DNA of 41,652 nucleotides from Geosiphon pyriformis uo1 (GCA_016748015.1 JAAOMT010000093.1:1-41652); one strand, 5' to 3'. Numbered from the stretch's first letter, positions 1,894 to 41,652 are shown. Made by a program: numbers and translations. The notes: generated from the letters alone by a model not told the origin.

Positions 1894-2643
1894 NNNNNNN
1901 NNNNNNNNNNNNNNNNNNNNNNNNNNNNNNNNNNNNNNNNNNNNNNNNNNNNNNNNNNNNNNNNNNNNNNNNNNNNNNNNNNNNNNNNNNNNNNNNNNNN
2001 NNNNNNNNNNNNNNNNNNNNNNNNNNNNNNNNNNNNNNNNNNNNNNNNNNNNNNNNNNNNNNNNNNNNNNNNNNNNNNNNNNNNNNNNNNNNNNNNNNNN
2101 NNNNNNNNNNNNNNNNNNNNNNNNNNNNNNNNNNNNNNNNNNNNNNNNNNNNNNNNNNNNNNNNNNNNNNNNNNNNNNNNNNNNNNNNNNNNNNNNNNNN
2201 NNNNNNNNNNNNNNNNNNNNNNNNNNNNNNNNNNNNNNNNNNNNNNNNNNNNNNNNNNNNNNNNNNNNNNNNNNNNNNNNNNNNNNNNNNNNNNNNNNNN
2301 NNNNNNNNNNNNNNNNNNNNNNNNNNNNNNNNNNNNNNNNNNNNNNNNNNNNNNNNNNNNNNNNNNNNNNNNNNNNNNNNNNNNNNNNNNNNNNNNNNNN
2401 NNNNNNNNNNNNNNNNNNNNNNNNNNNNNNNNNNNNNNNNNNNNNNNNNNNNNNNNNNNNNNNNNNNNNNNNNNNNNNNNNNNNNNNNNNNNNNNNNNNN
2501 NNNNNNNNNNNNNNNNNNNNNNNNNNNNNNNNNNNNNNNNNNNNNNNNNNNNNNNNNNNNNNNNNNNNNNNNNNNNNNNNNNNNNNNNNNNNNNNNNNNN
2601 NNNNNNNNNNNNNNNNNNNNNNNNNNNNNNNNNNNNNNNNNNN
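1894..2643. other. Assembly gap (N run)
   Basis: Continuous Ns; ORFs spanning it are artefacts. Confidence 0.99.
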
Positions 2644-9325: not shown

Positions 9326-10510
9326 ATGGCACCTCAGCAATTCTTTCACGCTTTATCCAATGATTTCGGGAGTCTATTTAACAGTCAGAAGTTCTCTGAT
9401 GTTAAAATTATAGTTGGCGAAGCGCCCAATATCAGAACTTTTCAATCTCATTCACAAATTTTAGCAGCAAGATCACCATATTTTGCTACAGCACTCTCTA
9501 GTAATTGGGTTAAAAGGGAAAATAATACTATTATCTTCAATAAACCCAATATTTCACCTAATATTTTTGAAATAATTCTCAGGTAAGAGTTTTATTTGCT
9601 TTAAAGAATTTTAGCTAACATTAAATCATATGTTTCATTTTCCTGGTACAGATATATTTATAACGGCGAAATTTCTCTTGATAAGCATGCAGTACCTACC
9701 ATTTTAGAATTGCTTGTCACCGCTGACGAGCTTATTCTAGAAAAAATTATTGATCCCCTTGAAGATTATTTGATTGAACACCATGCAAAAGAGCTAGAAG
9801 AAAATTTTGCCACTTTGCAAAAAACTTCATTTATGCATGATTCTTTCAAAAAGTTACAAAATTTTTGCACCGAAATAATTGTTAATAATTCAGCTATAGT
9901 CTTCAACTCCCAAGATTTCAACTCCCTTAGTGAAAATGCTCTTTCCTCAATTTTAACTNNNNNNNNNNNNNNNNNNNNNNNNNNNNNNNNNNNNNNNNNN
10001 NNNNNNNNNNNNNNNNNNNNNNNNNNNNNNNNNNNNNNNNNNNNNNNNNNNNNNNNNNNNNNNNNNNNNNNNNTACTTCGAGGCAGTCGAGACGGATTCA
10101 CTCCAGCCGATTTTCATCGATTATGTGATGATAAAGGAGCAACAGTAAGCGTAATCAAAGTGAAAGGAACTGGTCAGCTAATTGGCGGCTATAACCCACA
10201 ATCATGGCATTCTAAAAACGCTTGGTTGCAGGGAGAAGGAAGTTTTATTTTTTCCCTTGGAGATGGCAATGCTGGAAATGCTAAACTTAGCAAATTTGTT
10301 GGCGCATATGGACCTTATGATGGACAACACTATGGACCCAATTTTGGAAATGGCCTTATTTGGTTGGTTGGAAATGACTATAAAAGTAGTCCAGGGTGCT
10401 ATTGTATAAAGACAACAGATTATGAGCATGCTATAATGCCTGGTTCAGAAAATCAACAGGTGAATTTCTTTGTCGAGGAATATGAAGTTTTTCAAATTAT
10501 AAAAAGATAA
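9326..10510 (+). CDS. BTB/POZ-BACK-TLDc protein, copy 1 (interrupted by an assembly gap)
   Basis: Exon 1 9326-9582, intron 9583-9651 (GT..GCTAAC..AG), exon 2 9652-10510. BTB motifs SDVKIIVG and HSQILAARSPYF; TLDc motifs LRGSRDGF..FHRLCD, LIGGYNP, SFIFSL, GPNFG, VEEYEVFQI. Confidence 0.92.
9959..10073. other. Assembly gap inside BTB copy 1
   Basis: 115 Ns; the equivalent span in copy 2 is about 436 bp. Confidence 0.97.
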
Positions 10511-12327
10511 ATTCGTTTTTATTTAACTTGATTATACATTTCTGAAGGTTGTGCGACCTATATTTGAAATTTTCACTAGCAGAGTATTCTATAGCCTTTT
10601 ATTTTAAGCTCCACAATAAAGTTAACATAATAACACTCTATTTAAATCAAAACTATTTAGAAATTATAAGTTTTATTAATAATAAATGATCTTTGAAGTT
10701 TAGGTTTTTATCACAGGCTAAAACCATAAAATGTTCTTTGGCAGAATAACATTAGAAATATAATTTCCAAATTCATATTTGTGTTTTCTCGCTCATTAAA
10801 TTATAAATTTCTGGTTTTTACTATGCACTTATGTATAAAAATACTTTGAAAAAAAGTAAAATTTTGAAATAAAATATAAACTCAGCTTCGAGAGATAGTA
10901 ACTCTTTAATGAACCAAATTCTTATTAACAATATTTTTTGATATGTAATTATTTTCTTCTTATATATTTCAACATTGCAAAACTTTCTTTTTTAATTAAT
11001 TAAAGAAAGGTTTAATAATTACAGATTATGATTTATTATCAATATTAATTTTTACTATCTAACTAAATATTTCATAAACTTAATGGTTATTATCACAAAA
11101 CATTTGCTCTTTTTACCTATTATTTATTAATTGAATTTTTGGGCAGTAATTTTGTTTAAAATTGGAACTCGTTATTAATGTAACACCAAATCTCAATCTT
11201 TATCTAAGGTAGTTCAATTGTCAATGATTTAAGTGTCAAATTATATTTATGAATTTTTATTATTCACATAAAAATAATTTAAAAATAAAAATTCTTAAAA
11301 TGAATAGGTAATAATTATATGTTTAAACATCAATAATCCTATGATTCCTTTCACAAATTTTTATCTGGTTTAGCTAATATCATTTAGATAAATGGAAATG
11401 TTTTATAAAATTGCGAATCACTTTTATTCCTTAAAAAAACAACAAAAATGATTAGAATAAAACTTTGACAGAAATATATTATTTTTTATAATAACCAATC
11501 GAATTTAAAAAGGTATCCTAACGACATACCATTACTCATAAAAAAACCAAATTTGGAAAAAAAAGGATTCCCAACTATCCCAATAGCCTGAACAAAAACG
11601 ACTTGGCCATTCAGTTCAAATATATATAACAATAACAAACTATATAATTGATACCACCAAAACATTAACCAGAATAGATTAAAGAATTATTTTTGAAATA
11701 CCTTCAGAAGCAAAAATTTAAACTGCTTTTAAATTTTTACTAGCCAGTAAAAATTAGCTGTTAGATAAAAATTATAAATGCTGAATACAATGAAAACACC
11801 AAAATAATGATTTAAAATAAACTAATAAGGTATTTACAATTGTACCAAACAAAAAATTGTTCGAGCTATTGATTTATTTTACTCTAAATTTGGGTCCATA
11901 ACTGGTTCGAGAACATAAATAGTTATGAGTGAATGTAAAACCCCAGAATTTGGCTCTATTGGCTGTTTTAATCTAGTAAATACGGTTTTCAATATTCAAA
12001 TAAAAAATATCAGCTTTTGAAACTACTCTAAAGAATTACAATTTAATTTTTAAATTTACCATAAAAGCATAAATTTGTTCTAAATCCACCACTACATAAT
12101 AAATCTTTGAATCAATAAACAAATTTAGAAACATTAATTACAAATTTGAAATAGTTTTATTTTTCAATTTTAAAAAATTTAAAATGTTTAAAATAAATCA
12201 AATGATATTCTTTTAACTTTATTGTAAAGCTCAAATAAATGGCTATAGAATATTCTGGCAGTAAGAAATTTATAAATTGGGTGGTAAGACTTCAGAAAAT
12301 GTATAATCAAGTTAAATAAAAACGAAT

Positions 12328-13828
12328 TTATCTTTTTATAATTTGAAAAACTTCATATTCCTCGACAAAGAAATTCACCTGTTGATTTTCTGAACCAGGC
12401 ATTATAGCATGCTCATAATCTGTTTTCTTTTGACAAAAGCACCCTGGACTATTTTTATAGTCATTGCCATACAACCTAATATGGCCATTTCCAAAATTGG
12501 GTCCATAGTGTTGTCCATCATAAGGTCCATATGCGCCAACAAATTTGCTAAGTTTAGCATTTCCAGCATTGCCATCTCCAAGGGAAAAAATAAAACTTCC
12601 TTCTCCCTGCAACCAAGCGTTTTTAGAATGCCATGATTGTGGGTTATAGCCGCCAATTAGCTGACCAGTTCCTTTCACTTTGATTACGCTTACTGTTGCT
12701 CCTTTATCATCACATAATCGATGAAAATCGGCTGAAGTGAATCCGTCTCGACTGCCTCGAAGTGACAACTTAAAATCATTTGCAAGTTGATTTTCAAAAG
12801 ATTTATTTTCATCTTTGCCTAGAATCCAATGATCAAGCTGTCTTATATTATGCGATTGAAGAAGCTCTGAATCAATATTTGATCCGGAAAAACGTAATGG
12901 CTGAGCGTCTAGAGACTTTTGATGACTACCCGGTACGAGATAATGATGTAAAAGATCTTCATATAAAGTTCCAGGTAAGATTCTCGCAAATGGTTTTACT
13001 TTGTGATAGAAGTCAACTGAAGATATGTTAAAGAAGCGGATTAAAGGTAGAATTCTTTCAATGGATTCCTTAAAAGCGTTAAAGTTTTCATCTGTCCAGG
13101 TAAGAACTTCTTTCATCTGAATATTTTTATCCAATTTAGCGACTCCCCATTCCACAATCTTTTCCCATATCTTAGATTCTTCTATATTTAGGTCATCCCG
13201 AGTTAAAATTGAGGAAAGAGCATTTTCACTAAGGGAGTTGAAATCTTGGGAGTTGAAGACTATAGCTGAATTATTAACAATTATTTCGGTGCAAAAATTT
13301 TGTAACTTTTTGAAAGAATCATGCATAAATGAAGTTTTTTGCAAAGTGGCAAAATTTTCTTCTAGCTCTTTTGCATGGTGTTCAATCAAATAATCTTCAA
13401 GGGGATCAATAATTTTTTCTGGAATAAGCTCGTCAGCGGTGACAAGCAATTCTAAAATGGTAGATACTCCATGCTTATCAAGAGAAATTTCGCCGTTATA
13501 AATCTGTACAGGAAAATGAAAGATATGATTTAATGTTAGCTAAAATTCTTTAAAGCAAATGAAACTCTTACCTGAGAATTATTTCAAAAATATTAGGTGA
13601 AATATTAGGTTTATTGAAGATAATAGTATTATTTTCCCTTTTAATCCAATTGCCAGAGAGTGCTACAGCAAAATATGGTGATCTTGCTGCTAAAATTTGT
13701 GAATGACCATGAAAAGTCCTAATATTGGGCGCTTCGCCAACTATAATTCTAACATCAGAGAACTTCTGACTGTTAAATAGACTCCCGAAATCATTGGATA
13801 AAGCGTGAAAGAATTGCTGAGGTGCCAT
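12328..13828 (-). pseudogene. BTB/POZ-BACK-TLDc copy 2, inverted duplicate carrying a 4-bp deletion after the splice acceptor
   Basis: Exon 1 13828-13572, intron 13571-13504. Exon 2 starts ATTTATAAC where copies 1 and 3 have ATATATTTATAA, giving a stop at 13454-13452 (102-aa product). The downstream 373-codon BACK-TLDc frame is open. Could be a consensus error in an intact gene. Confidence 0.75.
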
Positions 13829-20505: not shown

Positions 20506-20850
20506 GCATTTCGTATAAAGACAATAGATTATGAGCATGATATAATGCCTGTATCAAACAATCAAAAGAGAGATTTCTTTGTCGAAGTTTTTCAAATCAT
20601 AAAAAGATGAATTTACTTTTATTTAATTTCATTATAAATTATCTGAAGGTTTTACAATCTATCTTGGAAATTTTCACTAGCAGAATATTCTATAGCATTT
20701 TATTTTAAGCCCCACAATAAAGTTAAGATAATAACACTCTATCTAATTTAAATCAGAAACACTTTAGAACTTATAAATTTAATTAATAAAAAATTATATT
20801 TGAAGTTTAAGTTTTTATCACAGGCTTAAACCATAAAATACTCTTTAGTT
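20506..20850 (+). pseudogene. 3' remnant of another BTB-TLDc copy (last ~35 codons plus 3' flank)
   Basis: gtataaagacaatagattatgagcatgatataatgcctg..tttctttgtcgaagtttttcaaatcataaaaagatga and the following ~240 bp align to about 10400-10745, with a 9-bp deletion in the EEYE segment. Confidence 0.88.
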
Positions 20851-21201: not shown

Positions 21202-22765
21202 CTAATCATTTAAAGTTCTTTTACAATCATTAATCTCTACGGACCAATATGGACCTTTATGGGTTGCCGATCCCAAACTTCCTAGACCCAGAGAATTTGA
21301 ACATTGCTAAAATGATAAAATGATAAAACAATGAAACGGATTAATACTGATTTTTTAAATTAGTCATTGTCAAATTCTAAGATATGCAAATAAATATTTC
21401 CTCATTTGCTTAAAAACTCACCGGATTTTCGCGCAGATATTTTCCAGATTGATCTTTTATTGCTTCACATTTAAAAGTATAAAATTGACTAATTCCATGA
21501 GATTGAATCCAATACTCTGTATCAAAATGTATATATCCTTGATGTATTTGAGGACTATGTGGAATAGAGTCATTGTCCAGAACAACTCGTCGCACAATTA
21601 GATTTTCTGTTACAAGTTTGGCAAAAGCTTTATCTCCAATACGAGGTTGCCCAAATGTATACACGTTAATATCTTTGGATCTAAATGATTGGCTTTGAAA
21701 TTTTAAGGCTAATGCTGTAAATATTGCATATACTAAATAAGAAGTAAATTATAAAAAGAAATTAAAAAAAGTTATTTTAACTTCTACTCTTCAAAACAAA
21801 AAGCATTAAAATAAAAATATTTTCTCTTTCTTTGAGATATATTTACATACCACCACCAGAATCAAACCCAGTCATACTTAAAGAAAAGTTTATATTCTTA
21901 TTTATCTCTGTTAACACTCGATCAATCAATACTTTTCGATGGTTTTGAAAAATTTTAAAAAATCCTTGATGAACTTTTGAAGATTGATCAAAAAGGTATT
22001 GAATTAATGTCATATCTCTAATGATATGATCCGCTGGTTCGTAACCACGAAAACTGAAAATTATTTCCGATTTCACCACATCTTTTTTTGCTATTACTAA
22101 AAAAAATATTATCATTTCAATTAATAATAGTTAAAAGAGTTTAGAAAATTTTTATGATATTTAAACTGAGTACCTTGAATATCATCAGAAGAATATATAA
22201 CTCGTTCGGCTTGCAAAGGTATACCACAATAAATACGTTTTGCGGATTTTCCGTATAATTCGATTTTTCCACTAACATTCTGATCAATTTCTTCCTTAAT
22301 TCCTCGATCTGGGTCAGCTTCAGTAAATAGTGTTCCATCATTTTGAAGTAGAAAAGGATTTGTATTTTCGAAGGAATTTGAAGCTAGTTGAAAATTTATT
22401 CCATCTTGACTTGATGAATCGACTGAGGATCCTTGTAAATTATCAGTTACAGATAGTGAAAGCGCCAAGTCACCTATCTCTTGTGAACTAGATATTCCAG
22501 CTAATGTTTTAACTTCTTGGTCATTATTATCAAAAAAATTATTACTAGAAATAAAAATAGGATCCAAGTTTAAATTGATATTATCGTTCAAAGGAAATAA
22601 TTCAAATGAATTATCCCTTTTAGAAATACTTGTGGATATAGGTTTTGCATATGCAATTGAATTTATGAAAAATAAGATTAAAAATATTGTAATGTTTCGC
22701 CGATTAAAACTTTGAAAGTAATCTTTGGATTGATACTTTCTTTGAGAGATAATATAATTAAGCAT
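21202..22765 (-). CDS. Lipase class 3-like protein B (~417 aa), Asp at the nucleophile position
   Basis: Exons 22765-22174, 22096-21851, 21732-21422, 21306-21202, in frame. Motifs FSFRG, KVHQGF, TGFDSGG|VYA, YTFGQPRIG, DSIPHSP, YIHFDTEYWI, CSNS, HKGPY. Signal-like segment ITIFLILFFINSIAYA and a KR site. Confidence 0.92.
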
Positions 22766-25700: not shown

Positions 25701-26534
25701 TATTATAATAAGTGCAAATTTGATTGTTTTAAATTTTAATTTCAATCAAAAAAAAAAGAAGAAAGTTTTCAATGTTTAAATAAAATAAGGAGGCAAAACT
25801 AGATTTTCCAAGTTTATTAGAAAATATTTCCATTTAAAAAGTAATTTTAAAAGAAATTATTTTATTAAAGAGTTAGTGTCTCGAATTTGAGATCAAAACT
25901 TTTACATCTTTCTTGAACCTCTCAAAGTTTTCTTTTTGAATATTTTTTAAAGTGTACCTTTTTTATTTCATTACCCCAGTAAAAAACCAAAATATCATTT
26001 AAATATTATAGTTTTAATGTCATTCAGCTATTAAGAATTTTATGGTTTTAGCGCTAATAAAAACTTTCACATCAAGGATTACTTTGTACATAAAATTTAA
26101 TGGTTTTACAAGCTTCAAGAAGCTTGTAAAAATCAATATGCTTTGCTCTGAATCCTTCAATACATCTCAGTCTTGCTAAATTTGCTTCGTATTGACTCTT
26201 TTGTAAATTTTTAATTCCCTCCCCCCCCCATCTTCTCTCATTCCGAGTTTGACTGACCAGAATCAATTTATTCTTAGATCCCTTAATAAGACAATAGGGC
26301 GAACAATTTTTTATTTAAATTGCTTTAAATCAAAGATTTTAGAACCTTTGAGTAAAAGACAAGAGCTTACAGAAGAGGTAGCAGAAATTTATTCGTTTAA
26401 AATAAATTTCAATAAAAATTGTCCATAATGTTGTGTCATTAGTGATTATGATGCAATTTGTAAACTTCAATGTTTAAAAAGCCGATAATTTTGATACGGT
26501 CTAGGTCTAGCAAACACCATCTGTAACCTTAGAA

Positions 26535-26594
26535 CTAGGGTTAGGGTTAGGGTTAGGGTTAGGGATAGGGATAGGGATAGGGATAGGGATAGGG
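26535..26594 (+). repeat. Interstitial telomere-like array CTAGGG(TTAGGG)4(ATAGGG)5
   Basis: Ten consecutive NTAGGG hexamers read directly. Confidence 0.95.
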
Positions 26595-26815
26595 ATTTTC
26601 GAAAGCATAGTTAACCTTTTTAAGCATTTAGAGTCATTTGAGTCCCTGAAGATCTGTACCCTTTTAAGCAAGCGTCTATTTTCAAAAATTTCTAGCGTTT
26701 CAAATTTCTTAAAGGCCAAGCCTTTTCAAGAACGTGATTATGGATTGAATTCTTATTTATTATTAAGACGAGCTCTTTTAAATCTCCTTCTTTACCCAAA
26801 CAAAATACTCAAAAC

Positions 26816-29216
26816 ATGTCCTCAACTTCATCCATTGAAAATGCAACTTCACCCCTCGACTGGCTTGAAGGAGCATTAATTGTCATCAAAGAAAACTTGT
26901 CTATTTTTCCAGCTAGTGAATATTCAAAAGTTGCTGAGTTGGTGAAAATATATCTTGAGCGCGATCAGAAAACACCTGAAAATTTATTCGATCGCTTGAA
27001 TAATAAAAGTTCAAAGCGTTCAATAGATTATATTGCCCTCGGCTTTTGTTTAGAACATGGGATTGGGACTATTCCCAATTTAAAAAAGGCGTTTTTAGAA
27101 TTTCAAAAAGCAGCGAATGCAAAAGATTCTTTTGGACAATTTTTTTTAGGTTATTGTTATGATAGCGGAATCGGTACTGTACAAGATCGAGAAAAAGCAT
27201 TTGATATCTATTCAAAAGCAGCCGAGGCGGGTAATACAAATGCACAAAACGTTCTTGCCCTTTGTTATGATAACGGATTAGGAACAACGAAGAATAGGGA
27301 AAAAGCATTTAAACTCTATTCGAAAGTAGCAGACGCGGGACATACAATTGCACAAACCAGGCTTAGAACATATTGTCTACACGGACTGCAAACAATGAAA
27401 GATCTGGAAAAAGTGGGAAATCCAAGTTCTCAAACTAATATTGAAATGTATTATCAAAACGGATGGGGAATAACGAAAAGTCTAGAAGAAACTTTTGAGT
27501 TTTATTTAAAAGCAGCAGAGGTGGGAAATCAAATTGCACAATACAACCTTGGATGGTGCTATCAAAATGGATGGGGAACCACAAAAAATTTAGAAAAAGC
27601 ATTTGAAATCTATTCAAAAGCAGCAGAGACAAATAACTCAAGTTATCGAAATAATTTTCCTGATTTGAATGTCCTAGACCTCATTTTAAAGGATCAAAAT
27701 AGTCTAGAACGTTTTATTTTACAATTTCAATATAGAGGATTAAAATCCCTGGGAAATTCTAAAGGAGAGTTTTTAGATTTTGAAGCTTTCTTTGACCTGC
27801 TTTCAGATGAATTCAAGTGTCTTAAATGTGGTAACTTGGGCATAATCATTACTGGATCTCCTATATGTCCATTTTGTGATACTGATAAAAGTGATAATAA
27901 TGTATTTGAGGCTGGCTTGCCGAAATGTCCAGGATGCAACAGTACATTAAAAGATCCACTTTGGTGTAACTCTTGTGAATCATCACGATTTTCAAAGATT
28001 TGGAGAACATGGGATAGTGGAGAAGATAATATTGATAAATATATAGAATATACACAGAATAATTCTGAAAACTCCAGGGAATGTCTAGAATGGATTTCTC
28101 CCAATGAGATTGAATTTTTAGATAAAGTGGGAGAGGGAGGATTTAGTATTGTTAAAAAAGGTAGTTGGGAGAGAGGCAAAATTCTATTTTGGGACGAGAA
28201 AAATCAAAAATATGAGCGGAGTGGTGTTACTAAAGTTGTTTTGAAATATTTTAAAGATAAACAAAATAAAAAATATATTAATTCAGATGAGGTATTTTCT
28301 TTTAAAAAACCTATGCTATTTTTATTATTCCAATTTCTTTTTCTAATAATAGAAAACGTATTCAAATAGTTGATTGCTTATCTTACCTGTGCCTCGTGCA
28401 AATACATCCTTGAATGCTATGGAATAACCAAAGATGTCATAACTGATGAATTTGTTATGGTTTTATCATTTGCGGAACATGGAGACCTTAGAGCTTTTCT
28501 CAAGATGAAGGAAACCACTCTTACTTGGGAAATGTTTCTTCGTATTCTATTTCAAATCGCTAGTGGGCTAAGATTCATTCATAATTCAAAATTGGTGCAT
28601 GGGAACTTACATCCTGGAAATATTCTTGTTTTGAAATCAAACCCCTTAAAAATTGTCATTGGTAGCCTAGGAGTCTGTCGTCCTGCCAATTACCCTCAAA
28701 AGTCTGGGGAAATTTTTGGTGTTATTCGATACCTAGCACCTGAAATTTGTAACTTGTCCCCTCATACGAAGTATAGCAATATTTATAGTTGTGCCATCAT
28801 TTCCTGGGAAATTATATCGGGAGAAAGACCGTGGAATCGTGTTATAGATCATATATCCATTCAATTATATACAATTCAGGGAAAGCGCCTCCCAATCCAA
28901 AAGCATATACCTCAATGTATTAAGGAAATAATTGAAAAAAATTGGGATGATAAACCGCACTGTCGTGATAGTGCAGAAGAACTTCAACAAAGAGTTATTG
29001 CTGCTCGTGATAACTGTGACTTGTATGGATTTATCCGTGAAAAAAAAATTAAAATCGAAAAGGTACAAGATACGATGCATTCTAGAAGTCGTAGTATCTC
29101 GAGCCCTGAACTTTCTGAAAATGGTAAGCCTTTTCACTTATTATTATTATTATTATTTAAAAGGTTTCTTTAATTTAAAAGGCCTTTTTTTAGAGTTGGA
29201 TTTGGCGTTTGGTTAA
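26816..29216 (+). CDS. Sel1-repeat / Cys-rich / tyrosine kinase-like protein (~750 aa), predicted pseudokinase
   Basis: Exons 26816-28291, 28370-29123, 29194-29216, in frame. Sel1 repeats (LGxCYxxGxGTxKxxEKAF), four CxxC pairs, WDSGEDNID..LEWI, GEGGFS, VVLK, HGNLHPGNIL, GSLG, YLAPE. Confidence 0.92.
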
Positions 29217-40769: not shown

Positions 40770-41652
40770 ATGTTACCCCAACAACACCTTCTCGCGTTAT
40801 CTAATGATTTTTGCGAATTTATTTAACACTCAGAAGTTCTCTGATGTTAAAATTATAGTTGGCGAAGCGCCCAATATCAGAACTTTTCAATCTCATTCCC
40901 AAATTTTAGCAGCAAGATCACCATATTTTGCTACAGCACTCTCTAGTAATTGGGTTAAAAGGGAAAATAATACTATTATCTTCAATAAACCTAATATTTC
41001 ACCTAATATTTTTGAAATAATTCTCAGGTAAGAGTTTCATTTGCTTTAAAGAATTTTAGCTAACATTAAATCATATGTTTCATTTTCCTGTACAGATATA
41101 TTTATAATGGCGAGATTTCTCTTGATAAGCATGGAATACCTACCATCTTAGAATTGCTTGTTACCGCAGACGAGCTTATTTTAGAGAATCTTATTGATCT
41201 CCTTGAAGACTATTTGATTGAACACCGTGCAGAAGAGCTAGAGAAAAGTTTCGTTACTTTGCATAAAACTTCATTTATGCATGATTCTTTCAAAAAGTTA
41301 CAAAATTTCTGCACAGAAATAATTGTTAATAATTCAGCTATAGTCTTCAACTCCCAAGATTTCACCTCCCTTAGTGAAAATTCTCTTTCCTCAATTTTAA
41401 CCCGGAATGACCTAAATATAGAAGAATCAAAGATATGGGAAAAGATTGTGGAATGGGGGGTTGATAAATTGGATAAAAATATTCAGATGAAGAAAGTTCG
41501 TTGCTGGACAGATGAAAACTTTAACGCCTTTAAGGAATCTATTGAAAGGCTTCTATCTTTAATCCGCTTCTTTAACATATCTTCAGTTGACTTCTATCAC
41601 AAAGTAAAACCATTTGCGAGAATCTTACCTGGAACTTTATATGAAGATCTTT
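40770..41652 (+). CDS. BTB/POZ-BACK(-TLDc) copy 3, partial, with a +1 frameshift near codon 14
   Basis: ATG 40770 gives MLPQQHLLALSNDF (cf. MAPQQFFHALSNDF); an extra T at 40808-40812 leads to a stop at 40824-40826. ATG 40804 is in frame with the rest. Intron 41028-41095; exon 2 is open to the window end. Confidence 0.82.

What the first reader, a model, noticed from the sequence alone, without database searches (positions are those of the whole stretch)
10355..10414. Hypervariable alternating-residue patch in the TLDc domain of otherwise near-identical paralogues
Seen: copy 1 LIWLVGNDYKSSPGCYCIKT versus copy 2 HIRLYGNDYKNSPGCFCQKK gives 7 amino-acid changes and 1 silent change in 20 codons, while the flanking TLDc sequence is almost identical. 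Six changes fall at i, i+2, i+4 positions (L/H, W/R, V/Y and Y/F, I/Q, T/K). The remnant at 20506 gives a third variant (FRIKTIDY). Known: alternating residues of a beta-strand share one face, and BTB-BACK proteins are Cullin3 substrate adaptors. Inference: TLDc may act here as a diversifying substrate-recognition surface, like an immune-type ubiquitin-ligase repertoire, rather than only its usual V-ATPase-binding role.
Basis: partly seen in the sequence, partly recalled or inferred. Interest (0 to 1): 0.8.

Follow-up and report, generated by a model that had tools for sequence, protein, structure and literature searches.

The report
Variable patch in gene-converted TLDc paralogues
Two neighbouring fungal genes kept almost identical by copying from one another still differ at one small exposed strip of the protein, and that strip changes unusually fast across a family of 150 or more such genes, so it may be where the proteins recognise their targets.

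Summary
Copy 1 (+, patch 10355-10414) and copy 2 (-, patch 12424-12483) differ at 10 bases within 58 bp: 9 change an amino acid, 1 is silent. They differ at only 1 other base in 431 compared.

By the names of the database hits, the genome is Geosiphon pyriformis. The genes belong to a BTB-BACK-TLDc family with at least 150 copies.

The near-identical flanks do not reflect recent duplication. The 3' flanks pair copy 1 with one gene on contig C706 and copy 2 with the other (100 informative sites against 0). Upstream of 10547 all four genes are identical or nearly so. This is gene conversion, and the patch is an island that was not homogenised.

For this pair alone, positive selection is not needed. 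The patch differs by 17%, no more than the unconverted flank (18-25%).

Across the family, silent divergence is the same inside and outside the variable region. Outward-facing strand positions give omega of about 2, inward ones about 0.6.

A diversifying binding surface is therefore moderately supported. A role as a Cullin-3 substrate adaptor remains inference.

Caveats:
- The assembly is Illumina-based, with a gap 282 bp upstream of the patch.
- Copy 2 carries a 5-bp frame-breaking deletion in its BTB region.

The parts
10355..10414 (+). The 20-codon patch in copy 1 (TLDc strand-loop-strand; alignment columns 124-143)
   Evidence: Ten of the 11 copy 1/copy 2 differences fall here. NG86 counts: sd=1, nd=9.
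12424..12483 (-). The same patch in copy 2 (residues 323-342 of the exon-2 ORF). The model has strands at 324-327 and 337-339 and a loop at 328-336.
10307..10413 (+). The wider variable island among the four closest genes (copy 1, copy 2 and the C706 pair)
   Evidence: All 11 sites that group copy 1 with copy 2 against L005 with L028 lie at 10307-10394. Six singletons of copy 1 or copy 2 lie at 10356-10413.
10104..10306 (+). A stretch identical in all four genes, silent sites included; read as a homogenised (converted) tract
10414..10546 (+). A stretch identical between copy 1 and copy 2, running 36 nt past the stop codon. The similarity pattern switches at 10547.
10547..10840 (+). Unconverted 3' flank of copy 1, orthologous to the 3' flank of L028 (C706, - strand gene)
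   Evidence: 88-91% identity to the L028 flank over about 620 nt, against 82% to the copy 2 flank over only 122 nt. 100 informative sites support copy 1 with L028 and copy 2 with L005; 0 support the third grouping.
9326..10510 (+). Copy 1, a BTB-BACK-TLDc gene. Exon 1 is about 9326-9582, the intron about 9583-9651, and exon 2 about 9652-10510, with an N gap at 9959-10073.
   Evidence: ORFs, homology. Splice sites are inferred from the family consensus.
12328..13828 (-). Copy 2, a BTB-BACK-TLDc gene. Exon 1 is 13828 to about 13572 and exon 2 about 13502-12328. A 5-nt deletion just after the splice acceptor breaks the canonical reading frame.
   Evidence: Pfam BTB, BACK and TLD. Deletion and annotated model P0001, which lacks 32 BTB residues.
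20506..20607 (+). Remnant of the C-terminal end of a TLDc domain (a pseudogene fragment)
   Evidence: tblastn: 62% identity over 37 residues.
40810..41651 (+). A third family member (BTB exon 40810-41028, BACK exon 41154-41651) that runs off the end of the window
   Evidence: tblastn: 88% identity.

Best explanation
Copy 1 and copy 2 are a convergent (tail-to-tail) inverted pair from a very large, clustered BTB-BACK-TLDc gene family of Geosiphon pyriformis. The organism is named from the database hits. The two genes are old paralogues. Their coding sequence, from at least the start of exon 2 to 36 nt past the stop codon, has been homogenised by gene conversion. The same holds between this locus and a second copy of the pair on contig C706. 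The 58-bp patch is the core of a roughly 100-bp island that was not homogenised. The island coincides with the segment that is hypervariable in the whole family: the stretch after the conserved GP-x-FG motif, made of a strand, a 9-residue loop and a second strand. There, residues pointing one way are conserved (Ile, Leu, two Cys). Residues pointing the other way change faster than silent sites. The most likely reading is that this face, together with two neighbouring loops (columns 73-81 and 102-123) and columns 157-158, is a ligand-binding surface under diversifying selection. On this reading the TLDc domain takes the place that Kelch or MATH domains hold in Cullin-3 adaptors. Shown: the clustering, the conversion, the family-wide hypervariability with unchanged silent divergence, the fold and the domain architecture. 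Inferred: that the variable residues form one exposed surface, that selection rather than chance kept this island unconverted, and the Cullin-3 adaptor function.
For: Clustering: (0 of 200,000 permutations). Family: at least 150 matches from 324 candidates, 44 of them with stop codons, arranged in arrays such as 12 on the 220-kb contig C483. Hits are named Geosiphon pyriformis, and the same architecture occurs in Rhizophagus, Diversispora, Acaulospora and Ambispora. Conversion: the 3' flanks pair copy 1 with L028 (88-91%) and copy 2 with L005 (96%). Copy 1 against copy 2 aligns for only 122 nt at 82%. Outside the patch the copy 1/copy 2 TLDc has 0 silent differences in 80 silent sites. The grouping switches sharply at 10547: 11 sites against 100 sites. 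Family-wide selection: 33 sister pairs give overall pN/pS 0.70. Columns 100-145 give pN 0.166 and pS 0.125; outside, pN 0.070 and pS 0.136. In the codon likelihood with the window pair masked, outward positions give omega 2.0 (p=0.005), inward 0.59, and the rest of the domain 0.50. A mixture over a grid of synonymous (alpha) and nonsynonymous (beta) rates gains 2dlnL=66.6 when beta>alpha is allowed. Posterior exceeds 0.9 at columns 137, 141 and 142 in the patch and at 78, 81, 103, 112, 114, 122, 123, 158 and 160. No donor: no other place in the assembly matches either 80-nt patch above 89%. States L124, H124, V128 and I141 occur in none of 64 other intact copies. Structure: AlphaFold2 pLDDT 87.7, with strands at 324-327 and 337-339. 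Foldseek TM is about 0.8 to the Oxr2 and NCOA7 TLDc domains, and the BACK part resembles KLHL11 and KBTBD2. The BTB-BACK profile hits KBTBD2, gigaxonin, KEAP1, KLHL3 and SPOP.
Against: For this pair alone nothing requires positive selection. Nine nonsynonymous to 1 synonymous is about what neutral change would give. Patch divergence (17%) is no higher than that of the unconverted flank (18-25%). Single-site FEL-style (per-site likelihood-ratio) tests survive multiple-test correction at only about 4 sites. Gene conversion within the family violates the single-tree assumption and can inflate site tests. The sister pairs were chosen greedily and are not strictly independent. No model coordinates were available, so surface exposure and 3D clustering were not measured. 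Copy 2 has a frame-breaking 5-nt deletion in the BTB region and may be a pseudogene. Copy 1 has an assembly gap. Expression is unknown, since no RNA run was found. The phi-x-E Cul3 contact motif is only partly kept.
Confidence: 0.55

Rival explanations
1. Neutral relic. The patch is simply old paralogue divergence left behind by a discontinuous conversion tract, for example patchy mismatch repair or two tracts that both stopped at a mismatch-dense segment. It lies in a loosely constrained surface loop and has no adaptive meaning.
For: Patch divergence (17%) equals or is below that of the unconverted flank. Nine to 1 is compatible with omega = 1. The whole patch has family-wide omega 1.0. In the C706 pair the same patch was homogenised, with only 1 difference.
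Against: Across the family, silent divergence is no higher inside the variable region than outside (0.125 against 0.136). As a rule, then, the region is not an old island. Outward positions exceed the silent rate. Codons 124, 128 and 141 each carry three different states among four genes that are otherwise identical.
Confidence: 0.25
2. Mosaic import. After homogenisation, a short conversion tract from a third, divergent family member (possibly a pseudogene) overwrote the patch in one copy.
For: Half-patch matches exist. C696:8241-8283 is 98% identical to the second half of the copy 2 patch, and C705:498509-498550 is 95% identical to that of copy 1. Copy 2 carries the commonest family states at columns 128, 134 and 141. 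The family has many pseudogene copies.
Against: No place in the assembly matches either whole patch above 89%. No intact copy shares more than 4 of the 7 codons. L124, H124, V128 and I141 are absent from 64 other intact copies, and K143 is seen in one. With more than 300 copies and few states per site, half-patch matches are expected by chance.
Confidence: 0.1
3. Assembly effect. Low-divergence parts of the four genes were collapsed to one consensus by the Illumina assembler and reused in each scaffold. Only the densely different patch stayed resolved, which exaggerates the contrast.
For: The N gaps in copy 1 and in L005 end at exactly the same base, where the 4-way identical stretch begins. 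The published assembly is Illumina-based with 795 scaffolds (PMC9453076).
Against: Isolated single differences are kept elsewhere: 10103, 10307, 10330, and the L028 singletons at 10457-10474. Each patch version is contiguous with its own distinct 3' flank within about 135-190 nt.
Confidence: 0.1

Closest known systems
Expanded, positively selected Cullin-3 adaptor families (MATH-BTB in nematodes and grasses; BTB-BACK-Kelch as the architectural model)
   Same: N-terminal BTB (plus BACK) followed by a C-terminal protein-binding domain. Large lineage-specific expansion in clusters. Many pseudogenes. Amino-acid change concentrated in the C-terminal domain while BTB and the domain core are conserved. 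The comparison with MATH-BTB evolution rests on my own knowledge of that literature; PMC4091423 was seen only as a listed title and abstract start.
   Different: The variable domain is TLDc, not MATH or Kelch. Cullin-3 binding is untested, and the phi-x-E motif is only partly kept. The selection signal is moderate (omega about 2 at a subset of sites).
Canonical TLDc proteins (Oxr1, NCOA7, mEAK-7/TLDC1, TBC1D24), which bind V-ATPase
   Same: Pfam TLD hit above the curated cut-off. Fold match with TM about 0.8 to 4acj and 7obp. The conserved RDGF-type motif aligns with mEAK-7 Gly276/His277, and variable loop columns 74/75 align with mEAK-7 Pro316/Gln317. Both are reported V-ATPase contacts (alignment; contacts in PMC9263379).
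   Different: Here the domain is fused to BTB-BACK, present in hundreds of copies, and variable where canonical TLDc is conserved (the segment aligned to LWLD...G.S...TF of NCOA7). V-ATPase binding was not tested.
The known TLD (PF07534) and BTB expansions in Glomeromycotina
   Same: It is the same expansion. Up to 400 TLD copies are reported (PMC10079182), and BTB expansion is noted in PMC9453076.
   Different: Those papers count domains and suggest protection from reactive oxygen. In the library searched I found no description of the localised hypervariable patch, its omega, or concerted evolution of the pairs.
Concerted evolution of inverted or tandem paralogues, with variable segments spared from homogenisation
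   Same: The coding sequence groups by locus while the flanks group by position. An internal segment stays different.
   Different: Whether selection or tract mechanics spares the segment is unresolved. In the C706 pair the segment was not spared.

Membership tests
TLDc domain (PF07534) | Sequence match to the family profile above the curated cut-off | tested here: met
   44.7 bits against a cut-off of 24.5, E=1.8e-11, covering profile positions 4-169 of 170.
TLDc domain (PF07534) | TLDc fold | tested here: met
   The AlphaFold2 model matches 4acj, 7obp and 8ar9 with target TM 0.78-0.82 and Foldseek probability 1.00.
TLDc domain (PF07534) | Binding to V-ATPase V1 subunits | not testable with these tools
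   Only a sequence register to mEAK-7 contact residues could be drawn.
BTB-BACK Cullin-3 substrate adaptor | BTB domain followed by a BACK domain | tested here: met
   Pfam BTB E=3.4e-11 and BACK E=1.4e-9. The family profile hits KBTBD2 at 3e-14, plus gigaxonin, KEAP1 and KLHL3.
BTB-BACK Cullin-3 substrate adaptor | phi-x-E Cul3 contact motif in the BTB domain | tested here: inconclusive
   In the KBTBD2 alignment the Glu is kept, but the hydrophobic position is Lys in the family consensus. The position of the motif comes from my own knowledge.
BTB-BACK Cullin-3 substrate adaptor | Physical binding to Cullin-3 and ubiquitylation of a bound substrate | not testable with these tools
   Needs pull-down or yeast two-hybrid experiments.
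Diversifying adaptor or receptor repertoire | Large, clustered, lineage-specific expansion with gene birth and death | tested here: met
   At least 150 matches from 324 candidates. 44 carry stops. There are 12 copies on C483 and 5 within 70 kb on C702.
Diversifying adaptor or receptor repertoire | omega above 1 confined to the presumed binding surface, with normal silent divergence | tested here: met
   pN/pS 2.3 at sites chosen beforehand (p=0.0016), and pS equal inside and outside the region. Outward positions omega 2.0, p=0.005. Mixture gain 2dlnL=66.6. The signal is moderate in strength, and recombination was not modelled.
Diversifying adaptor or receptor repertoire | Variable residues form one exposed patch in 3D | tested here: inconclusive
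   The alternation on two modelled strands fits, but no coordinates were available to measure exposure or clustering.
Concerted evolution by gene conversion | Discordant relationships between the converted tract and its flanks, with a sharp boundary | tested here: met
   100 informative sites against 0 beyond 10547, and 11 against 0 for the other grouping inside the coding region.

The most novel reading that the evidence does not exclude
The BTB-BACK-TLDc genes of Glomeromycotina are an immune-like repertoire of ubiquitin-ligase adaptors. Their TLDc face is kept diverse by selection against the homogenising pull of gene conversion. It could be further shuffled by short conversions from the large pool of pseudogene copies. 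The targets would be proteins of symbionts, endobacteria, viruses or foreign nuclei. TLDc would then be a general, evolvable protein-recognition module rather than only a V-ATPase binder.
Probability: 0.2. Interest if true: 0.8.

Novelty: new variant of a known kind. Interest (0 to 1): 0.55.

Why it matters
The TLD and BTB expansions of arbuscular-mycorrhizal fungi are among their largest gene-family expansions, and they have no known function. The published suggestion is protection from reactive oxygen. A conserved scaffold with one fast-changing face, in a Cullin-3-adaptor-like architecture, points instead to recognition of many different partners. It also gives a concrete set of residues to swap or mutate. 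The locus is also a clean example of concerted evolution sparing a functional segment. Finally, it warns that near-identical paralogues with a variable patch need not be young.

Tried and rejected
I did not reconstruct ancestors by any other route. I used sister-pair counts, and a pruning likelihood that sums over internal states without printing them.
Reads and expression could therefore not be examined. Those places were sent to no search tool afterwards. They were masked in the local tblastn, and the flank analyses used 10511-11160 and 11678-12327 only.
- Single-sequence phmmer of the TLDc domain against the PDB gave only chance hits to ATP sulfurylases. A family profile was needed.
- The profile of the whole exon-2 alignment returned only BTB-BACK hits among the 60 listed.
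- The spliced gene model was never joined. Exons were searched by reference one at a time. P0001 is the database's own model.
- Two script calls did nothing useful.
- Rejected: recent duplication as the cause of the flank identity (the flanks say otherwise).
- Rejected: a single distant donor for the whole patch.
- Rejected: a mutation hot spot (silent divergence is not raised in the region).

Full report
**What is at the coordinates.** The window is AT-rich eukaryotic DNA, about 25% G+C, with introns. It is contig C361 of a 128-Mb assembly in 792 pieces. Nearly all close protein hits are named Geosiphon pyriformis. The published assembly of that fungus is 129 Mb in 795 scaffolds, 29% G+C, and Illumina-based (PMC9453076).

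Copy 1 lies on the + strand (first ORF 9326-9586, second 9710-10510). Copy 2 lies on the - strand (13828-13568 and 13449-12328). The two genes converge, with about 1.8 kb between their stop codons. Pfam finds BTB, BACK and TLD in copy 2. A third copy starts at 40810 and runs off the window. A 37-residue TLDc remnant lies at 20506-20607.

**The observation.** It is correct. Over 10080-10510 the two copies differ at 11 bases. Ten of them lie at 10356-10413. By Nei-Gojobori counting the patch has 9 nonsynonymous and 1 synonymous difference. The rest of the aligned TLDc has 1 and 0, over 292 nonsynonymous and 80 synonymous sites. None of 200,000 random placements reached 10 differences in 58 nt. 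The changes sit at columns 124/126/128 and 139/141/143 of my family alignment, plus 134.

**Why the flanks are identical.** The nearest relatives are another convergent pair on contig C706 (L005 and L028). The evidence has four parts.

- The 3' flank of copy 2 is 96% identical to that of L005 over 650 nt.
- The 3' flank of copy 1 is 88-91% identical to that of L028 over about 620 nt.
- The flanks of copy 1 and copy 2 align for only 122 nt at 82%, and that stretch includes the 36 identical bases after the stop.
- In a four-way alignment, 100 informative sites beyond 10547 group copy 1 with L028 and copy 2 with L005. None support the third grouping. Inside the coding region the only informative sites (11, all at 10307-10394) group copy 1 with copy 2. 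Positions 10104-10306 are identical in all four.

The inverted pair is therefore older than the duplication that made the two loci. The coding sequences have since been homogenised by gene conversion. Between old paralogues, about 14 or more silent differences would be expected in 80 silent sites; none are seen.

An earlier first-stage note of this scan (s1-516024) describes a head-to-head pair of the same family elsewhere in this genome, with mosaic identity. That fits, but I did not test it.

**What this means for the pair.** The patch differs by 17% at the DNA level. This is no more than the unconverted flank (18% over the aligned 122 nt, about 25% once the 36 identical bases are removed). 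Nine nonsynonymous to 1 synonymous is close to the neutral expectation of about 5 to 1 in sites. The pair alone therefore does not demonstrate positive selection.

Three points keep it interesting.
- Codons 124, 128 and 141 each carry three different states among four genes that are otherwise identical.
- Several states occur in none of 64 other intact copies: Leu and His at 124, Val at 128, Ile at 141.
- No place in the assembly matches either 80-nt patch above 89%, so a simple import from a donor is unlikely.

**The family.** A six-frame search of the genome gave 150 scored matches from 324 candidates. Of these, 44 carry stop codons, and they lie in arrays: 12 on the 220-kb contig C483, and 5 within 70 kb on C702. 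I aligned 66 TLDc exons, 63 of them complete and open, by codon.

The entropy profile shows a conserved scaffold with four variable stretches: columns 73-81, 102-123, the patch, and 157-158.

*Sister-pair counts.* For 33 greedily chosen sister pairs, overall pN/pS is 0.70.

| Region | pN | pS |
|---|---|---|
| Columns 100-145 | 0.166 | 0.125 |
| Outside 100-145 | 0.070 | 0.136 |

Silent divergence is the same in both. The region is therefore neither a mutation hot spot nor, in general, an old unconverted island.

Tested in the 31 pairs that exclude this quartet, they give pN/pS 2.31 (Fisher p=0.0016). Outward-facing positions 126, 128, 130, 137, 139 and 141 give 2.24 (p=0.0004). In all 33 pairs, inward positions 125, 127, 129, 138 and 140 give 0.27.

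*Codon likelihood.* I used my own model on an IQ-TREE codon tree (kappa 2.5, global omega 0.575). With the window pair masked it gave:

| Sites | omega | p |
|---|---|---|
| Outward positions | 2.0 | 0.005 |
| Inward positions | 0.59 | 0.051 |
| Whole 20-codon patch | 1.0 | 1 |
| Outside columns 100-145 | 0.40 | below 1e-40 |

*Single-site tests.* FEL-style (per-site likelihood-ratio) tests reach p<0.05 with beta>alpha at 13 columns. By my Benjamini-Hochberg reckoning on those p-values, about 4 hold at a 10% false-discovery rate: columns 122, 123, 137 and 158.

*Mixture.* A mixture over a grid of synonymous (alpha) and nonsynonymous (beta) rates gains 2dlnL=66.6 when beta>alpha is allowed. It puts 13% of its weight there. 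Posterior exceeds 0.9 at 78, 81, 103, 112, 114, 122, 123, 137, 141, 142, 158 and 160.

Positions 124, 134 and 143 are not.

Caveats: gene conversion violates the single-tree assumption, the pairs are not strictly independent, and NG86 is crude. The direction of all tests agrees, but the strength is moderate.

**Structure.** AlphaFold2 on a 62-sequence alignment gave pLDDT 87.7 for the 373-residue exon-2 product of copy 2. The patch is residues 323-342: a strand at 324-327, a loop at 328-336, and a strand at 337-339. Conserved Ile, Leu, Cys and Cys alternate with variable residues, as expected for strands with one buried face.

Foldseek matches the TLDc domains of zebrafish Oxr2 and human NCOA7 (target TM about 0.8). 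It matches the BACK part to KLHL11 and KBTBD2. The family profile hits Cullin-3 adaptors: KBTBD2 at 3e-14, plus gigaxonin, KEAP1, KLHL3 and SPOP.

In profile alignments the patch corresponds to the NCOA7 segment that follows its G-R-F-G motif. The conserved RDGF motif aligns with mEAK-7 Gly276/His277, and variable columns 74/75 align with Pro316/Gln317. Both pairs are reported V-ATPase contacts (PMC9263379). This hints that the variable surface overlaps the canonical binding face. It rests on sequence register only. No coordinates were available, so exposure and 3D clustering are inferred, not measured.

**State of the two genes.** Copy 1 has a 115-N scaffold gap where copy 2 has about 438 bp. 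L005 has a gap ending at the same base. This is a sign of repeat collapse in the assembly and a reason to verify the flank identity with reads.

Copy 2 has a 5-nt deletion just after the splice acceptor of exon 2, and this breaks the canonical frame. The database model P0001 avoids it by dropping 32 BTB residues. Copy 2 may therefore be a pseudogene or a sequencing error. Its TLDc is intact.

Those places were not sent to any search tool afterwards.

**What is known.** The TLD expansion in Glomeromycotina, up to 400 copies, is published and interpreted as protection from reactive oxygen (PMC10079182). The BTB expansion is also published (PMC9453076). Searches for TLDc together with Rhizophagus, BTB or arbuscular mycorrhizal fungi found no paper describing a hypervariable TLDc patch or its evolution. 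The closest concept is the positively selected Cullin-3 adaptor families such as MATH-BTB; that comparison rests on my own knowledge.

**Verdict.** The near-identical background is due to gene conversion (confidence about 0.9). Family-wide diversifying selection on the outward face of the patch and neighbouring loops is moderately supported (about 0.65). The Cullin-3 adaptor and recognition-repertoire function is a reasonable inference (about 0.4).

Noticed in passing
window 26816-29173 (+): A Sel1-repeat ORF (Pfam Sel1 E=1e-40) is followed directly by a protein tyrosine/serine-threonine kinase ORF (E=1.5e-32). Sel1 and kinase domains are reported as expanded in Glomeromycotina.
   Followed up: partly
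window 13450-13570 (-) against 9584-9709 (+): Copy 2 lacks 5 nt present in copy 1 just after the exon-2 splice acceptor. This breaks the canonical reading frame. The database gene model P0001 compensates by skipping 32 residues of the BTB domain.
   Followed up: partly
window 9959-10073; L005 1352-1501; window 1894-2643: There are N runs of 115, 150 and 750 bases. The first two end at exactly the same base of the gene, where the sequence becomes identical among four paralogues. This looks like scaffold gaps at a collapsed repeat.
   Followed up: partly
G000 contig C706, about 955769-962794 (L005, L028): A second convergent pair of the same genes, 6 kb apart. It is positionally orthologous to the window pair in the opposite order. 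Here the patch was homogenised, with 1 difference. L028 carries a cluster of 7 private changes corresponding to window 10457-10474.
   Followed up: partly
window 21410-22765 (-): Three consecutive ORFs on the minus strand. One contains a G-Q-P-R-I-G-D motif that recalls class-3 lipases. This is from memory and was not tested. It is possibly one gene with introns.
   Followed up: no
window 26507-26719 (-): A short microsatellite that reads as Pro-Ile and Pro-Asn dipeptide repeats in one frame, just upstream of the Sel1-kinase gene.
   Followed up: no
alignment A2 (Rhizophagus, Diversispora, Acaulospora, Ambispora homologues): In other Glomeromycotina genera the same post-GP-x-FG segment is the most variable part of the TLDc domain and also carries insertions and deletions. 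A four-residue stretch before the last strand is present only in the Geosiphon-like sequences.
   Followed up: no
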